Shown here: piece by piece, positions 28,898-34,499 of the stretch
Layout of the letters: the number at the start of each line of letters is the position of its first letter
Numbering within the stretch: the stretch's first letter is position 1
Sequence record: LR745206.1
Direction: 5' to 3' (one strand)
DNA length: 64,000 bases
Notes under the pieces: model-generated
The model's database searches: none
What the model was told of the DNA's origin: nothing
What the model saw: only the letters and a program-made list of their open reading frames with translations
Made by a program: the position numbers and the translations under genes

Positions 28898-30298
28898 TTA
28901 GGTACATTCTGGACAATCTGTTACACCACTACCACCACAATCATCACACTCTCTTGTACCGTCACCATCACATCTAGGACAATCTTCCTTATCATCGCCC
29001 TTACCAACTGTACCGTCACCATCACAATTTGAGCAAGTATAACTACCATCACCATCACACTCGTAACAACTTCTTCTACCACTACCATCACAAGAATCAC
29101 AAGAAATATAGTCACCTCCAGTTGATTCTAAAACATATGCACCTGAGCTGTTATTAATTGATAAGGTACCACTTTTGTTCCAAAACTTCAAAGTATCTAA
29201 ATAAGGATATCCTTCATATGTTCCTGGTTTTATATCAACTGTTAGATCTAAATTAACATTTGATCCATCAGGAGATACTACTGCTCCGCTCCCTGCTGAT
29301 CCATTTGTTCTTTTTGTATACCACCCATTTTCTTTAGCATAATCTCTAAATAATTGAACATCAGAATCTTTTGTTGTGTAGATTCTATCCATGAATTTTT
29401 TACCATCTCTTAATTTCCAAAGTAAAGCTCTACCAATTATTTTAGTAGGGTCATCTTCTGATTTAAATATAACAAGAGTACAAACTTCTGGATTTGACAT
29501 ATAAATATCAAAATAGTCTTCATTCACATCAGACATACAAGAACTACCAAGTGTACCATTTCTATTATAGTAGTTTCTATAACTATACCAGTATCCGATT
29601 TTATCACCTGTTATTTCTTCAAATAGTGTGAATTTATCATTGAATTTATCAATAGTTGCTTTGTATAGATTAACAAAATCCTCTATTTCTTTATCAGCGA
29701 ATTTTATATCAGCTGATCCTAATAAGGCTCTTATTGCTCTACCTATTCGTATTTCTTGTCTATTTGTTGACCATACTAATTTTGTTGTCTCATCAACGGC
29801 TCTCAATTTCTCAACATTAATAACCAGGTCTGTATTTGTAAATTTAACCCAAGCAAATGTTTTATTTGACTTTTCAGAAACTACTTTTTTGATAACTTCA
29901 CCAATTTCGTTTTCCTCTGGTTGTACTATTTCTTCGGTTGTTGGTGTAAATCCTAACTCATCGAAAAGCTTTTTATTCTTATATTCACCAGCTTCATTTT
30001 TATTATATGTTAGCCACCCACCGTTTCTACCAACAAATCTAACCGTTTCTTTTCTATCATTTAATATTTGTTGTGCTCTTCTGTCTGGTATAAATGATAC
30101 TGTATCATTTTTATCCATTAATAAATCGAAGTAATTAGATCTAACATCCAAGTCTTTATTTTCTATACCTAGTAGTGATTTTGATATTGGATTTTCTATT
30201 TTTGATAATGCTAATCTGAATTTATCAGAATAAACAACATCAGATTCTAGAATTAAATCCATTGATTCTTTTATAAAGTCTAAATACTTCTTTATCAT
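28898..30298 (-). CDS. N-tagged phage protein with C-terminal DnaJ-type CxxCxGxG zinc-finger array
   Basis: MIKKYLDFIKES; GTLGSSCM, IIGRALLW, FMDRIYT core; six CxxC pairs at C-terminus. Confidence 0.7.
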   Translation of the reverse strand: MIKKYLDFIKESMDLILESDVVYSDKFRLALSKIENPISKSLLGIENKDLDVRSNYFDLLMDKNDTVSFIPDRRAQQILNDRKETVRFVGRNGGWLTYNKNEAGEYKNKKLFDELGFTPTTEEIVQPEENEIGEVIKKVVSEKSNKTFAWVKFTNTDLVINVEKLRAVDETTKLVWSTNRQEIRIGRAIRALLGSADIKFADKEIEDFVNLYKATIDKFNDKFTLFEEITGDKIGYWYSYRNYYNRNGTLGSSCMSDVNEDYFDIYMSNPEVCTLVIFKSEDDPTKIIGRALLWKLRDGKKFMDRIYTTKDSDVQLFRDYAKENGWYTKRTNGSAGSGAVVSPDGSNVNLDLTVDIKPGTYEGYPYLDTLKFWNKSGTLSINNSSGAYVLESTGGDYISCDSCDGSGRRSCYECDGDGSYTCSNCDGDGTVGKGDDKEDCPRCDGDGTRECDDCGGSGVTDCPECT

Positions 30299-30347: not shown

Positions 30348-30626
30348 ATGAAATATATTAAATCCTATAAAATATTCGAATCCACTTATAGTATTGATGA
30401 ATACATCTTATCAATTTCAAGTGAGTTAGGTAAATATAATATAACACCAGTTGCTATTAGAACACTATTAGATAATTACTCTGATATAATACAAAATAGT
30501 ATGGAAAATGAGGTAACTCCACATAATTTTGTAAAAAATATTATCAAGGATATGGATTTAAGTAGTGGTGGATTTATATCACAAATGTCACCACCTAGTC
30601 AACCAACCGAGATTAAATATCTATAA
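30348..30626 (+). CDS. hypothetical protein, N-terminal tag
   Basis: MKYIKSYKIFES. Confidence 0.7.
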   Translation: MKYIKSYKIFESTYSIDEYILSISSELGKYNITPVAIRTLLDNYSDIIQNSMENEVTPHNFVKNIIKDMDLSSGGFISQMSPPSQPTEIKYL

Positions 30627-30673: not shown

Positions 30674-31045
30674 ATGAAGATTAAAAGATTTAATGAAATA
30701 TCAGAAGAAGTAAAGATTTCAGAGAATATAGATACTGATATTATGGGTATAACAACTGTTTCTGGGAGAAGAATTCCAACTAATCCAAATAGGAGAACTC
30801 AATATTTTTATGATTATTATACTGGTAAAAGAATAACTGGTAAATCTAAATATGAATTAAACTCAAAAATATTTGATTTGGCTAAAAGGGATGATGAAAT
30901 TGGACTTATCGCTCAATTCTGTTTACAAGTGGAGAGAGATAGTATGAGTATAGATTATAGTATGAGTGGTCAAATGGATAATAAACTAACTAAACTAACC
31001 ACTACACCGGAAAAGGATCAAGAAGATACTAAACCAATTGAATAA
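30674..31045 (+). CDS. hypothetical protein, N-terminal tag
   Basis: MKIKRFNEISEE; TAATATATA upstream. Confidence 0.7.
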   Translation: MKIKRFNEISEEVKISENIDTDIMGITTVSGRRIPTNPNRRTQYFYDYYTGKRITGKSKYELNSKIFDLAKRDDEIGLIAQFCLQVERDSMSIDYSMSGQMDNKLTKLTTTPEKDQEDTKPIE

Positions 31046-31250
31046 TCAAACATCCCATGTTTGTTGGGTGTTCATTCACCATAAAGTCATAATCAATACA
31101 AGCTTCCTTAACTATTTCCTTCATTCTATCACTTAATCCGGTTATAACTTCAATACTATTTCCGTTTTTTTGCATAACTTCCCAGAAGAACGAGTCGAGT
31201 CTTCTAATAACATCTTCATGTCTAACACCGTGTAAGTCTATTTTTTCCAT
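31029..31250 (-). CDS. stand-alone Smr-domain protein
   Basis: KIDLHG...LDSFF...IEVITG signature. Confidence 0.7.
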   Translation of the reverse strand: MEKIDLHGVRHEDVIRRLDSFFWEVMQKNGNSIEVITGLSDRMKEIVKEACIDYDFMVNEHPTNMGCLIIQLV

Positions 31251-31265
31251 TTAATATATATCTAT

Positions 31266-31520
31266 ATGAGATATCTAAAACCATATAAAAAGTTTATAGA
31301 AAATGCTGATGGATCATCAACATCAGGAATGGGTGCTGTTTCTTCTGCTCAACCTGGTGGATTAGCTGGTACAACTGGAACTGATGGATCTGGTGATTTA
31401 GGATTTGTTTTCAAGAAGGAGAAAAGAAAGAAGGGTGATGCTAGTGAGGTTACTGATATAAGAGATCTTGAAAAAGTTGATGTTGAAAAAGTTGATGATA
31501 TAGGATTAAATAAAAACTAA
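31266..31520 (+). CDS. small Gly/Ser-rich protein, N-terminal tag
   Basis: MRYLKPYKKFIEN then low-complexity segment. Confidence 0.7.
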   Translation: MRYLKPYKKFIENADGSSTSGMGAVSSAQPGGLAGTTGTDGSGDLGFVFKKEKRKKGDASEVTDIRDLEKVDVEKVDDIGLNKN

Positions 31521-31546: not shown

Positions 31547-31867
31547 ATGCTTGATTTAGATAAATATAAAAATAAGAGGTTCAGTAAGGACAAATTCATT
31601 GATAAACGAATAAAAGCTCTCTTTTTATTCTATGATAAAAGGGTCGGTGAATTGAAATTGGGATATAGACAAAGTATAGAACTTCTAAACCACATGATTT
31701 CTGTTTTAGTTGATAGTGAGGAATATGAGTTAGCAGCAGCTTTCAAAAAAAGGAAATTTAGAAAGTGGAGAAAGTGGAGAAAGATTAAAAGACTTTGGTC
31801 ATTTAAATTATTCTATCGTGTTTGGAGATTTAGATTATATAAAATATTTAAAATAAAAATAGACTGA
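31547..31867 (+). CDS. basic hypothetical protein with possible UVR-like motif
   Basis: LVDSEEYELAAAFKKR; weak similarity only. Confidence 0.5.
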   Translation: MLDLDKYKNKRFSKDKFIDKRIKALFLFYDKRVGELKLGYRQSIELLNHMISVLVDSEEYELAAAFKKRKFRKWRKWRKIKRLWSFKLFYRVWRFRLYKIFKIKID

Positions 31868-32114
31868 TTTACATTTGTGTGATCAAATATAATTTCAGTC
31901 TAACTTCTACGAGTTTCAGAACTTCACAATTTCATTCACTCTATCACACATCTTTTAGTTCGGAGTGTTAGTATGATAAACACTTACCTACTGCGGGACC
32001 AACAGATTTATTATCCCATAACCTCGGTAAAGGTTATCCTATTTTTCAGCACGAGTTACCGCAAGTGATTTATATAGGTATATTTTTTATTGATTTCGGT
32101 ATACTTAAACACCT
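31861..32114 (-). ncRNA. candidate structured non-coding RNA
   Basis: ~260-nt gap between convergent genes; own TATATTTG box at 32120-32127; several stems, an 8-bp loop-loop pairing, and a terminal hairpin followed by a U-rich tract. Confidence 0.6.
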
Positions 32115-32132
32115 TACTACAAATATAAGGAA

Positions 32133-32399
32133 TTATTTTGACTTATCCTTACTTTTTGATTTTTTATATTTCTCAGCTTTTTCTGTTATTTCACTAAGAG
32201 ACATACCAAATATCAAAGCAACCATTACTATTAAAAAGGCTATTACACCCACAGCGATAGCAGAAACTGGTATCATCCATATTGGACAAGTTACCCACCA
32301 CCAACTCCAAGAAGCAACAACTCCAATTTCTGCTAATTTTAATACTAGAAATATCAAAAATACAATTATTGGTAAACTCAATGTGTTTTTATTTGTCAT
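32133..32399 (-). CDS. small membrane protein
   Basis: Two hydrophobic helices, WSWWWVTCPIW, basic tail. Confidence 0.75.
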   Translation of the reverse strand: MTNKNTLSLPIIVFLIFLVLKLAEIGVVASWSWWWVTCPIWMIPVSAIAVGVIAFLIVMVALIFGMSLSEITEKAEKYKKSKSKDKSK

Positions 32400-33450: not shown

Positions 33451-33918
33451 TTAAAAAATTTCATCAAATTTATTTTTATCCTTCTTTGATATCTTATTTA
33501 CCCTATCCTCATGTCTACCACCTTCAAATTCCGTTTTTAGAAATTCATTCACACAATCAATAGCTTCTTCTACTGAAATATATCTACCTGGTAGTGTTAG
33601 TACATTAGCATCATTGTGTAGTCTTGCCATATTAGCTATTTCAGAGTTCCAACATAGAGCCGCTCTAATACCTTGCCATTTATTAGCTGTCATATTTATT
33701 CCATTACCAGATCCACACACCAATATACCAAAATCACATCTATTCTTCTCAACATCCTCTGCTACTTTATGAGCATAATCTGGATAATCACATCTTTCTT
33801 CTATAAAACATCCTCTATCAAAAATTTCAATTTTATTTTTCTTTGTGTAAAGGTACTTTTTAATTTCCTGTTTTAGTTCAAATCCAGCATGGTCAGAACC
33901 CATAGATATTTTAATCAT
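33451..33918 (-). CDS. rpiB: ribose-5-phosphate isomerase B
   Basis: GSDHAGFELK, DYPD, GILVCGSGNGI, ARLHNDANVL, FEGGRH. Confidence 0.95.
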   Translation of the reverse strand: MIKISMGSDHAGFELKQEIKKYLYTKKNKIEIFDRGCFIEERCDYPDYAHKVAEDVEKNRCDFGILVCGSGNGINMTANKWQGIRAALCWNSEIANMARLHNDANVLTLPGRYISVEEAIDCVNEFLKTEFEGGRHEDRVNKISKKDKNKFDEIF

Positions 33919-33929
33919 AGTATTAGTTT

Positions 33930-34499
33930 TTATTTTATCATTATAGTGAGTGAATACATATTTAAGTTAGTTATCTTATCTATATCACTTATGTTGATGC
34001 TATTTCTATCAAATTGATCAAAAAGTGTCATTCCATCTTTTTTAATTTCTCTTGGAGTATCAGCATTTGTCATATATGATATACTACTTATTGTGTAATT
34101 ATGTTCTGTAAATTCAGGTCCATTGAATTCATCACCAATATGTTTGATAAATCTAATCACATCACCATCAATTTCTGAAAAATTAAACTCCGTTAGATTA
34201 GTATATGCGTAAAAATCACCATATTTTGGCTTGAATATTCTAACATAATCATCTTTTTGTTCAATAATAAAACCATCATCTATTAGATGTGATAAGTAAT
34301 CGGTGATATCTTCTTCAAAACTCTCTTTTATTATCCTAAATTTAAGTAGAGGTTTACCATTAATAGTAACATCACCTTTTGCATTTTTACCTATTTTTTT
34401 AACAACTATCTTCTTGTTCTTGAATCTCCCACCAAGAACGGTATCACCAACCTTAATAGGTATTTTAATCATTTCATCAAATCTATTTAAATGTTTCAT
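33930..34499 (-). CDS. hypothetical protein, N-terminal tag, paralog family
   Basis: MKHLNRFDEM; second IIKESFEE; DYLSHLIDDGF. Confidence 0.7.
   Translation of the reverse strand: MKHLNRFDEMIKIPIKVGDTVLGGRFKNKKIVVKKIGKNAKGDVTINGKPLLKFRIIKESFEEDITDYLSHLIDDGFIIEQKDDYVRIFKPKYGDFYAYTNLTEFNFSEIDGDVIRFIKHIGDEFNGPEFTEHNYTISSISYMTNADTPREIKKDGMTLFDQFDRNSINISDIDKITNLNMYSLTIMIK

What the first reader, a model, noticed from the sequence alone, without database searches (positions are those of the whole stretch)
31861..32114. Candidate novel ~250-nt pseudoknotted ncRNA with its own promoter and terminator
Seen: a GC-enriched gap between convergent genes with a host-type promoter (32120-32127, minus strand). 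Minus-strand pairings: a 12-bp closing stem AUAAA(U)CACUUGC (32073-32061) with GUAAGUGUUUAU (31987-31976); hairpin AUAACCU/AGGUUAU (32037-32018); GGGAU/GUCCC (32017-32013 with 31999-31995); GAACU/AGUUC (31961-31957 with 31923-31919), whose loop UGUGUGAU (31950-31943) is perfectly complementary to AUCACACA (31883-31876) in the loop of the terminal hairpin AGACUGA/UCAGUCU (31901-31895 with 31867-31861); then a U-rich tract. Two stems need G-U wobbles that work only on the minus strand. It matches no tRNA, tmRNA, RNase P or riboswitch signature I recognise. Inference: a phage sRNA, ribozyme or protein-sponge RNA.
Basis: partly seen in the sequence, partly recalled or inferred. Interest (0 to 1): 0.75.

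Follow-up and report, generated by a model that had tools for sequence, protein, structure and literature searches.

The report
New structured RNA of huge phages
The gap holds a real gene for a roughly 265-base non-coding RNA with an intricate, evolutionarily conserved fold, found once per genome in a group of very large freshwater phages, matching no catalogued RNA family and of unknown function.

Summary
The window is part of LR745206.1, a 634.8-kb "Mahaphage" predicted to infect Bacteroidetes. On the minus strand, about 32116 to 31850, lies a stand-alone RNA gene. It has a Bacteroidetes-type -7 box (TAnnTTTG, 32127-32120) and ends in a hairpin plus U-run.

I collected 56 loci (49 distinct sequences) from a second huge phage, IMG/VR contigs and aquatic metagenomes. 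Each has one copy.

Covariation supports eight helices and three long-range loop pairings:
- L3 CGGYAA with L4 UURCCG
- L6 GUCAUAC with the downstream GUAUGAC
- the P7 loop GYGAA with the terminal-hairpin loop UCRCA

The pairs hold in 93-96% of cells, against 27-48% when the partners are slid. No shuffle out of 500 reached this.

His 12-bp closing stem and his pseudoknot partner are accidents of this one sequence.

Rfam 15, ARAGORN and the literature give no match. No reverse transcriptase, Cas, TnpB or tRNA neighbour is conserved, and the downstream gene is often convergent, so the RNA acts in trans.

Function is unknown. My best guess is a folded scaffold or decoy that binds a protein, or a self-assembling RNA.

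The parts
32120..32127 (-). -7 promoter box TATATTTG (Bacteroidetes type, TAnnTTTG). The window has no TTTG at -33.
   Evidence: 39 of 40 distinct promoter regions read TAnnTTTG. The box is always 4 nt before the conserved AAGG. 29 of 40 also carry TTTG 19-20 nt upstream. The box columns are invariant while the sequence upstream diverges.
31850..32116 (-). The whole RNA gene. The predicted 5' end is about 32116-32114 and the 3' end lies in the U-run 31859-31850. Both ends are inferred, not mapped.
   Evidence: CM R1 hits 31987-32118 at 120.8 bits. CM R2 hits 31856-31995 at 93.1 bits. There is one copy in the window. No reading frame stays open across the region.
32098..32113 (-). P1, the 5'-terminal hairpin GGUGU/AUACC, followed by the conserved GAAA
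   Evidence: 95.9% paired, with two pairs changed on both sides. Coordinates.
32079..32097 (-). J1/2, an A-rich single-stranded linker containing the invariant AAAUA
   Evidence: Alignments A3 and A4.
32038..32078 (-). P2 (CCUAU 32078-32074 with AUAGG 32042-32038) encloses P3 (32067-32050). The 6-nt loop L3, CGGUAA, is at 32061-32056.
   Evidence: All 5 pairs of P2 and all 7 pairs of P3 show changes on both sides. The window subfamily is offset by one column in P2, which lowers the counted pairing.
32018..32037 (-). P4 hairpin AUAACCU/AGGUUAU. Its loop L4, UUACCG (32030-32025), pairs with L3 to form PK1, a 6-bp kissing interaction.
   Evidence: PK1 is 100% paired in 46 distinct sequences, with C-G to U-A in 4 and G-C to A-U in 1. 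RNAalifold picked it unprompted.
31995..32017 (-). P5, GGGAU/GUCCC, with the 13-nt loop AAUAAAUCUGUUG
   Evidence: Always pairable and never varies, partly because my search patterns fixed it. L073, found by another route, reads GAAAAAACUGUUU here.
31962..31988 (-). P6: P6a (GG/CC) and P6b (GUGUU/AACAC), with loop L6 AUCAUAC at 31977-31971
   Evidence: P6a is 100% and P6b 99.5% paired. All 5 pairs of P6b changed on both sides.
31943..31961 (-). J6/7, GAACUAAAAGA (31961-31951), then GUGUGAU (31949-31943), which pairs with L6 to form PK2, an H-type pseudoknot.
   Evidence: PK2 is 99.4% paired, with 5 of 8 pairs changed on both sides. PK2 was not part of the model that made the alignment.
31911..31941 (-). 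P7: outer stem GAGU/ACUC, a symmetric purine-rich internal loop GAAU/UGAA, inner stem GAA/UUC, and loop AUUGUGAAG (31930-31922)
   Evidence: The outer stem is 95.5% paired, with G-C to A-U in 13 sequences. The inner stem is 100% paired, with A-U to G-C in 2.
31850..31901 (-). Terminal hairpin (31901-31861) and U-run (31859-31850). Its loop AUCACA (31883-31878) pairs with the P7 loop UGUGA to form PK3.
   Evidence: All 15 stem pairs changed on both sides. For PK3, GUG with CAC occurs in 27 distinct sequences and GCG with CGC in 5, with none discordant. PK3 is 94.9% paired on A8.

Best explanation
This is a gene for a stable, trans-acting, highly structured RNA of about 265 nt that belongs to a new family.

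Shown:
- It is conserved as one copy per genome in a group of huge aquatic phages.
- It is read from the minus strand, from a conserved host-type (Bacteroidetes sigma-A) -7 box.
- It ends in a hairpin plus U-run.
- It folds into a 5' domain (P1; P2 enclosing P3; P4; P5, with the loops of P3 and P4 paired over 6 bp) and a 3' domain (the P6 hairpin, whose loop pairs with a downstream strand; P7 with a purine-rich internal loop; and a terminal hairpin whose loop pairs with the P7 loop).

Inferred:
- Host RNA polymerase makes it early in infection.
- The 5' and 3' hairpins protect its ends.
- It works as a folded particle, not by base-pairing to a message and not as a leader of a neighbouring gene.

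My committed guess for what the particle does is that it binds a host or phage protein as a scaffold or decoy, with the near-invariant P5 loop and the GCAGUAG junction as the likely contact. I put that at about 0.4. Self-assembly through its loop pairings (about 0.2) and catalysis (about 0.1) are the main alternatives.
For: Identity and spread:
- The window is LR745206.1. A second huge phage, LR756502.1, keeps 197 nt at 81% identity while its flanking genes differ.
- There are 55 pattern-matched loci (48 distinct sequences) plus L073.
- Each locus has exactly one copy.

Structure:
- The 5' domain is 92.9% paired against 29-48% when partners are slid. 18 pairs have changes on both sides, and 0 of 500 shuffles match.
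- The 3' domain is 95.8% paired against 27-40% slid, with 31 such pairs and 0 of 500 shuffles. On the plain MAFFT alignment it is 89.5%.
- PK1, PK2 and PK3 were left out of the covariance models that made the alignments, yet they are 100%, 99.4% and 94.9% paired.
- A blind mutual-information scan puts model pairs at the top.

Strand and non-coding nature:
- G-U pairs outnumber A-C by 268 to 72.
- No frame is open across the RNA.
- Fold z-scores are -3.0 on the minus strand and -1.2 on the plus strand.

Promoter: 39 of 40 distinct promoters carry the -7 box at a fixed distance from P1.

Trans action:
- The gene downstream is convergent in the window and in most loci, and same-strand in others.
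- No reverse transcriptase, Cas, TnpB or Rsr neighbour was seen, and no tRNAs lie nearby.
Against: - There is no transcript evidence, and both ends are predicted only.
- The simple terminator scan did not call the terminal hairpin because it is A+U-rich.
- All homologs come from related phages, so shuffle tests overstate independence.
- The invariance of P5 and part of P4 was forced by my search patterns.
- Nothing points to a particular protein partner. The nearby Smr-like ORF is only syntenic and scores below Pfam's cut-off.
- The arm of the terminal hairpin varies from about 9-11 to about 17-23 layers. That sits poorly with a rigid intramolecular PK3.
Confidence: 0.8

Rival explanations
1. 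The RNA self-assembles without protein. One or both loop-loop pairings (above all PK3, P7 loop with terminal-hairpin loop) form between molecules, hand in hand, giving dimers, rings or larger bodies. phi29 pRNA, ROOL and GOLLD do this.
For: Covariation cannot tell pairing within a molecule from pairing between molecules. In ROOL and GOLLD, kissing loops first found by covariation proved to be bridges between chains (PMC12286853). P7 and the terminal hairpin are neighbours joined by a short linker. The terminal arm varies from about 9-11 to about 17-23 layers while its loop is kept, which is awkward for a fixed contact within one molecule. The two loops are complementary to each other rather than to themselves, as in pRNA.
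Against: No experiment exists. Internal loops in P7 and in the long terminal arms could bend the helices enough for a contact within one molecule. Helix lengths in the 5' domain are constant, as expected if PK1 forms within the molecule.
Confidence: 0.2
2. It is a ribozyme, either self-cleaving or acting on another RNA.
For: It has a compact, pseudoknot-rich fold with highly conserved junction and loop nucleotides. This is the pattern seen in glmS, VS and RNase P RNAs (my own knowledge).
Against: No Rfam ribozyme model matches, even at E up to 10. No conserved candidate cleavage site or substrate is evident. It is not associated with tRNA genes.
Confidence: 0.1
3. It is a base-pairing small RNA that targets phage or host messages through a conserved single-stranded segment.
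For: It has its own promoter and terminator, as bacterial sRNAs do. It has conserved unpaired stretches: J1/2, the P5 loop and J6/7.
Against: It is far more structured than known antisense sRNAs. Most conserved loops are used in internal pairings. The complement of the P5 loop is not enriched in the window: 7 matches against 4.7 expected, and 21 of 100 shuffles reach 7.
Confidence: 0.08
4. It is a cis-acting leader or riboswitch that controls the next gene through its terminator.
For: It combines a complex aptamer-like fold with a terminator hairpin. In L001, L004 and L008 a same-strand gene starts 20-40 nt after the U-run.
Against: In the window and most loci the next ORF is convergent. Downstream genes differ between loci. 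No Rfam riboswitch matches. No alternative anti-terminator pairing is conserved.
Confidence: 0.04
5. It is not an RNA at all: a DNA-level site (origin, packaging or recombination site), a degenerate small ORF, or chance symmetry in an A+T-rich spacer.
For: The spacer is A+T-rich, and such sequence forms many accidental hairpins.
Against: There are 49 pairs with compensatory changes. The G-U over A-C excess is strand-specific. Conservation is far above that of the flanking genes. No frame is open.
Confidence: 0.02

Closest known systems
GOLLD and ROOL RNAs (large 'ornate' phage and prophage RNAs of unknown function)
   Same: Phage-encoded, independently folded, rich in pseudoknots and kissing loops supported by covariation. 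No known protein partner and no known function (PMC12286853).
   Different: No sequence or structure match in Rfam. This RNA is about 265 nt, whereas GOLLD members often exceed 800 nt and ROOL is several hundred nt (my own knowledge). It is not next to tRNA genes. Its hosts are Bacteroidetes-infecting huge phages.
phi29-family packaging RNA (pRNA)
   Same: A phage RNA with its own promoter, of similar size, carrying two loops that are complementary to each other and covary. In pRNA those loops pair between molecules to build a ring (my own knowledge).
   Different: No Rfam match. Different helices. Two separate loop pairs of 6 bp rather than one of 4 bp. pRNA belongs to small phi29-like phages of Bacillus, not to huge phages. 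No link to packaging genes was seen here.
6S RNA, Y RNA and CsrB-type decoy RNAs
   Same: Stable trans-acting RNAs with their own promoter and terminator that work by binding a protein.
   Different: There is no rod with a central bubble (6S), no Ro-binding stem or nearby rsr gene (Y RNA), and no repeated GGA hairpins (CsrB). No Rfam match.
Lysine and purine riboswitch aptamers (kissing loops of neighbouring hairpins)
   Same: Neighbouring hairpins are locked by loop-loop pairing. The lysine aptamer has a 6-bp kiss made possible by a bend in one arm (my own knowledge).
   Different: This RNA is not a leader, since downstream genes vary and are often convergent. It has none of the riboswitch consensus sequences.
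Candidate structured RNAs predicted in IMG/VR (Fremin, Bhatt and Kyrpides 2023)
   Same: The same data source: seven IMG/VR contigs carry this RNA. That screen predicted 10,006 candidates (PMC10690425).
   Different: I could not check whether this RNA is on their list, because no supplementary files are held. The sequence string occurs in no searchable paper.

Membership tests
Any Rfam 15 family (4,227 models) | A covariance-model match at or above the family's gathering score | tested here: not met
   There are 0 matches in the whole window at gathering thresholds. At E up to 10, nothing on the RNA strand except a 13-bit plant microRNA hit. Nothing on the RNA itself in 8 homolog loci.
tRNA / tmRNA | Cloverleaf, or a tRNA-like domain plus a tag reading frame | tested here: not met
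   ARAGORN finds 0 genes in the window and none at the RNA in 41 loci. The frame that starts at the GCA after P5 is not conserved in length or phase.
Independent transcription unit in Bacteroidetes | A -7 box TAnnTTTG, usually with TTTG near -33, at a fixed distance from the transcript start | tested here: met
   39 of 40 distinct promoters have TAnnTTTG exactly 4 nt before AAGG. 29 of 40 have TTTG 19-20 nt upstream, but the window does not. The promoter consensus itself is from my own knowledge of the Bacteroides and Flavobacterium literature.
Intrinsic terminator | A stable hairpin followed directly by a U-run | tested here: met
   A hairpin with all 15 pairs covarying, followed by a T-run, is present in all full-length homologs. 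The simple scan missed it because it has fewer than 3 G-C pairs. Termination itself was not tested.
Cis-regulatory leader / riboswitch | A constant position upstream of a same-strand gene of related function | tested here: not met
   The downstream ORF is convergent in the window and in most loci. Other loci have different same-strand genes.
Guide or template RNAs of mobile or defence systems (omega/reRNA, tracrRNA, retron msr, DRT ncRNA) | An adjacent gene for IscB, TnpB, Cas or a reverse transcriptase, and a variable guide or template segment | tested here: not met
   The conserved neighbours are small membrane proteins, RpiB, an Smr-like ORF and a Cys-rich protein. Both RNA ends are conserved hairpins. 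Genes elsewhere in the 634-kb genome were not examined.
GOLLD / ROOL | A match to the family model, a size of several hundred nt or more, and frequent tRNA neighbours | tested here: not met
   No Rfam match, a size of about 265 nt, and no adjacent tRNAs.
phi29 pRNA | A match to the family model, inter-molecular loop pairing, and a role at the packaging motor | tested here: inconclusive
   The model match is not met. Complementary covarying loops are present. Whether they pair between molecules, and any role in packaging, cannot be tested with these tools.
Self-cleaving or other ribozymes | A match to a known ribozyme model, or demonstrated catalysis | tested here: not met
   No model match. 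Catalysis cannot be tested here.

The most novel reading that the evidence does not exclude
The RNA is a new self-assembling RNA. Its covarying loop pairs, PK3 above all, join separate molecules hand in hand, so that the largest known phages make an RNA-only ring, filament or cage during infection.
Probability: 0.2. Interest if true: 0.85.

Novelty: new member of a known kind. Interest (0 to 1): 0.68.

Why it matters
Huge phages carry hundreds of genes of unknown purpose, and almost nothing is known about their non-coding RNAs beyond tRNAs and tmRNAs.

This RNA is small enough to make and study in vitro. It also carries three covariation-supported long-range pairings, a level of folding normally seen in ribozymes, riboswitches, ribonucleoprotein cores or the recently solved RNA-only assemblies.

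It is kept at about 80% identity between two huge phages whose surrounding genes no longer align at the DNA level, so it is under strong selection.

It offers a concrete, testable object: a new fold for structural work, a probe for a host or phage factor that such phages need to control, and a marker gene for this phage group in lake metagenomes. If the loop pairings prove to join separate molecules, it would add a new, compact example to the few known natural RNA quaternary structures.

Tried and rejected
- **Rfam.** Gathering thresholds on the whole window, and E up to 10 on the region and on 8 homolog loci, gave nothing.
- **ARAGORN.** It found no tRNA or tmRNA at the RNA.
Rejected.
They do no better than shuffles. 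In L001 and L014 the inner P7 stem changes to GAG/CUC, which keeps P7 and breaks his helix.
- **A tmRNA-like tag frame starting at GCA after P5.** Its length and phase are not conserved.
- **A fourth pairing between J1/2 (CCAA) and the P5 loop (UUGG).** J1/2 varies without compensation (by eye), and the blind mutual-information scan gave no inter-domain pair.
- **The P7 internal loop as a kink-turn.** By eye, GAAU/UGAA is symmetric and does not fit the 3-nt bulge plus tandem G-A pattern.
- **Targets complementary to the P5 loop in the window.** Not enriched.
- **A conserved protein partner next to the gene.** I found only synteny within related phages.
- **A host homolog.** The one genome hit that is real, L068, has the RNA's 5' part joined to a truncated S5 gene at a contig end. 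Other contigs of that organism were too short to resolve this.
- **The list of Fremin et al.** No supplements are held.
- **More distant relatives.** Three differently built patterns found the same six IMG/VR contigs. A 5'-hairpin pattern added L073. One pattern found nothing.

Full report
**Where the window comes from**

A blastn search places the window in LR745206.1, an uncultured phage genome of 634,780 bp (100% identity). Genomes of this size were described as members of the "Mahaphage" clade. [quoted passage not shown] The window holds no N.

**The observation**

The region lies between two ORFs:
- an 88-aa membrane-protein ORF on the minus strand, 32133-32399
- a 106-aa ORF on the plus strand, 31547-31867, which overlaps the last hairpin

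As single-stranded RNA the minus strand folds to -60 kcal/mol, z = -3.03, and no shuffle out of 200 does as well. The plus strand gives z = -1.24.

The GC enrichment is mild. The RNA is 31.8% GC against 29.2% for the window. Its core is 37-38% against 19-28% in the flanking spacers.

**Homologs**

A second huge phage, LR756502.1 (642 kb), keeps 197 nt of the gap at 81% identity while the neighbouring genes do not align and are arranged differently.

An 18-nt conserved string found six IMG/VR contigs of 26 to 436 kb. Two other patterns found the same six.

A gapped pattern found 58 metagenome loci and 6 genome loci. Of all the loci collected, 17 are G+C-rich chance matches and 55 are real, giving 48 distinct sequences.

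A pattern from the 5' hairpin added L073, which differs in the P5 loop. That shows my earlier patterns had forced part of the apparent invariance of P4 and P5.

Among 50,697 phage records only the two huge phages carry the RNA.

Covariance models of the two halves find exactly one copy per locus, including the window: 120.8 and 93.1 bits.

**Transcription signals**

In 39 of 40 distinct upstream regions the box TAnnTTTG lies exactly 4 nt before the conserved AAGG that opens the first hairpin. 29 of 40 also have TTTG 19-20 nt further upstream, though the window does not. That these are the -7 and -33 elements of Bacteroidetes promoters is my own knowledge of the literature.

All full-length homologs end in a hairpin followed by a T-run. 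The consensus scan missed it because the stem is A+U-rich.

Both RNA ends are therefore predictions: a 5' end at about 32116-32114 and a 3' end within 31859-31850.

**The fold**

Window coordinates:

| Element | Sequence | Window position |
|---|---|---|
| P1 | GGUGU/AUACC | 32113-32098 |
| P2 | CCUAU/AUAGG | 32078-32074 with 32042-32038 |
| P3 (inside P2) | loop L3 CGGUAA | loop 32061-32056 |
| P4 | AUAACCU/AGGUUAU, loop L4 UUACCG | 32037-32018, loop 32030-32025 |
| P5 | GGGAU/GUCCC | 32017-31995 |
| P6 | loop L6 AUCAUAC | 31988-31962, loop 31977-31971 |
| J6/7 | GAACUAAAAGA | 31961-31951 |
| PK2 strand | GUGUGAU | 31949-31943 |
| P7 | symmetric internal loop GAAU/UGAA, loop AUUGUGAAG | 31941-31911 |
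| Terminal hairpin | loop AUCACA | 31901-31861 |

There are three long-range pairings:
- **PK1:** L3 with L4
- **PK2:** L6 with GUGUGAU
- **PK3:** the P7 loop UGUGA with the terminal loop UCACA

**Tests of the fold**

5' half, plain MAFFT alignment:
- P1-P5 plus PK1 pair in 92.9% of cells.
- With the 3' partners slid by 1-3 columns, pairing falls to 29-48%.
- 18 pairs have changes on both sides, and no shuffle out of 500 reaches the observed values.
- PK1 pairs in all 46 distinct sequences, with C-G to U-A in four and G-C to A-U in one.

3' half:
- The plain MAFFT alignment gives 89.5%.
- The alignment made with a covariance model containing only the nested helices gives 95.8%, against 27-40% slid.
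- 31 pairs have changes on both sides, and 0 of 500 shuffles match.
- PK2 is 99.4% paired (5 of 8 pairs changed on both sides) and PK3 is 94.9%. Neither was in the model.

An alignment-free count for PK3 gives G-U-G with C-A-C in 27 distinct sequences and G-C-G with C-G-C in 5, with none discordant.

The window, L005, L001 and L003 show all four combinations of the PK1 and PK3 variants. At least one of the two changes therefore arose more than once or moved by recombination. This step is my inference.

RNAalifold chose PK1 and PK2 on its own. A blind mutual-information scan ranks model pairs at the top and finds no further long-range pair.

G-U pairs outnumber A-C by 268 to 72, so selection acts on the minus-strand transcript. 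No reading frame stays open across the RNA. The median longest stop-free run is 16-39 codons out of 88.

Right:
- P4, P5 and the terminal stem are right.
- The gene, its strand, its promoter and its terminator are also right.

Wrong:
- His 12-bp closing stem pairs in 52.6% of cells against 53.3% in shuffles.
- His pseudoknot and GAACU/AGUUC helix together reach 79.9% against 79.4% in shuffles. Two pseudoknot pairs form in only 7-8 of 42 sequences.

The residual complementarity exists because two segments both contain UGUGA-like strings: the PK2 strand and the P7 loop. Covariation assigns the terminal loop to the P7 loop and assigns UGUGUGAU to the P6 loop.

In L001 and L014 the inner P7 stem reads GAG/CUC. 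That keeps P7 and breaks his GAACU/AGUUC helix.

**What it is not**

- No Rfam 15 family matches, even at E up to 10, in the window or in eight homolog loci.
- ARAGORN finds no tRNA or tmRNA at the RNA. Only 2 of 41 loci have any tRNA, kilobases away.
- The downstream ORF is convergent in the window and in most loci, and is a different same-strand gene in others. A leader or riboswitch role is therefore unlikely.
- The conserved neighbours give no sign of a reverse transcriptase, Cas, TnpB or Ro protein. They are two small membrane proteins, RpiB, a 73-aa Smr-like ORF (24.2 bits, below Pfam's 25.7 cut-off) and a 466-aa Cys-rich protein.
- The complement of the P5 loop is not enriched in the window.
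- The sequence string occurs in no searchable paper.
- A 2023 screen predicted 10,006 structured RNAs in IMG/VR (PMC10690425), but its lists are not held, so I cannot say whether this one is among them.

**How it most likely works**

Shown: a single-copy, strongly conserved, independently signalled RNA gene with eight helices and three long-range pairings.

Inferred: it is made by host polymerase, is stabilised by hairpins at both ends, and acts in trans as a folded particle.

I favour a protein-binding scaffold or decoy, at about 0.4. The most conserved unpaired nucleotides cluster in the P5 loop and the following GCAGUAG, and the rest of the fold looks built to present them. No partner is identified.

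The main alternative is self-assembly, at about 0.2, for three reasons:
- P7 and the terminal hairpin are neighbours joined by a short linker.
- The terminal arm ranges from about 9-11 to about 17-23 layers while its loop is kept.
- In ROOL and GOLLD, kissing loops found by covariation turned out to bridge separate chains (PMC12286853).

Catalysis (about 0.1) and antisense action (below 0.1) remain possible.

**Novelty and verdict**

This is a new RNA family within a known kind, the orphan complex-folded RNAs of phages. It is not a member of GOLLD, ROOL, pRNA or any other catalogued family.

The finding is real and worth experimental follow-up. The function is open.

Noticed in passing
L068 1-700 (CAIRRW010000057.1, MAG 'uncultured Bacteroidetes', 4,793-bp contig): The first ~215 nt are the promoter and the RNA from P1 through P6 and GAAUUAAAAG. 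The sequence then runs in frame into a ribosomal protein S5 gene that lacks its start, followed by rpmD, rplO, secY, map and infA. The two sequences share only about 15-20 nt (GAAATCGAATTAAAAGAT). This is either an assembly chimera at a contig end or a dead phage-host recombinant.
   Followed up: partly
window 31029-31250 (-): This is a 73-aa ORF with the DLHG motif of Smr nuclease domains (Pfam Smr 24.2 bits, cut-off 25.7), and the only such ORF in the 64-kb window. A 71-74-aa ORF with the same motif lies 0.5-1.9 kb downstream of the RNA on the same strand in 26 of 55 loci. In the rearranged LR756502 locus one lies 1.4 kb away on the other side.
   Followed up: partly
window 31266-31520 (+), 30348-30626 (+), 30674-31045 (+), 33930-34499 (-): Several small ORFs here open with a similar N-terminus, M-[KR]-[YH]-[LI]-K-x-[FY]...F. 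In BLAST clustering, two window ORFs fall in the largest neighbour family, which has 76 ORFs in 43 loci on both strands around the RNA gene. I did not record which window ORFs those two are. No Pfam hit for the three of these ORFs that I scanned.
   Followed up: no
window 33451-33918 (-): The phage carries a ribose-5-phosphate isomerase B (LacAB_rpiB, 197 bits), an auxiliary metabolic gene. It is conserved near the RNA in 18 loci.
   Followed up: no
window 28898-30298 (-): This 466-aa protein has a C-terminal ~60 residues that are a run of CxxCxGxG repeats, a DnaJ/BSD2-like zinc-finger pattern (weak Pfam hit only). It is conserved in 21 loci.
   Followed up: no
window 31547-31867 (+): This 106-aa ORF overlaps the RNA's terminal hairpin on the opposite strand and ends in a very basic tail (KRKFRKWRKWRKIKRLW). 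It has no Pfam hit and may not be a real gene.
   Followed up: no
L073 642-905 (-) (IMGVR_UViG_3300035670_013255): This family member was missed by all patterns built on P5. Its P5 loop reads GAAAAAACUGUUU instead of RAUAAAUCUGUUG, so the family is wider than the 55 pattern-matched loci and P5 is not strictly invariant.
   Followed up: yes
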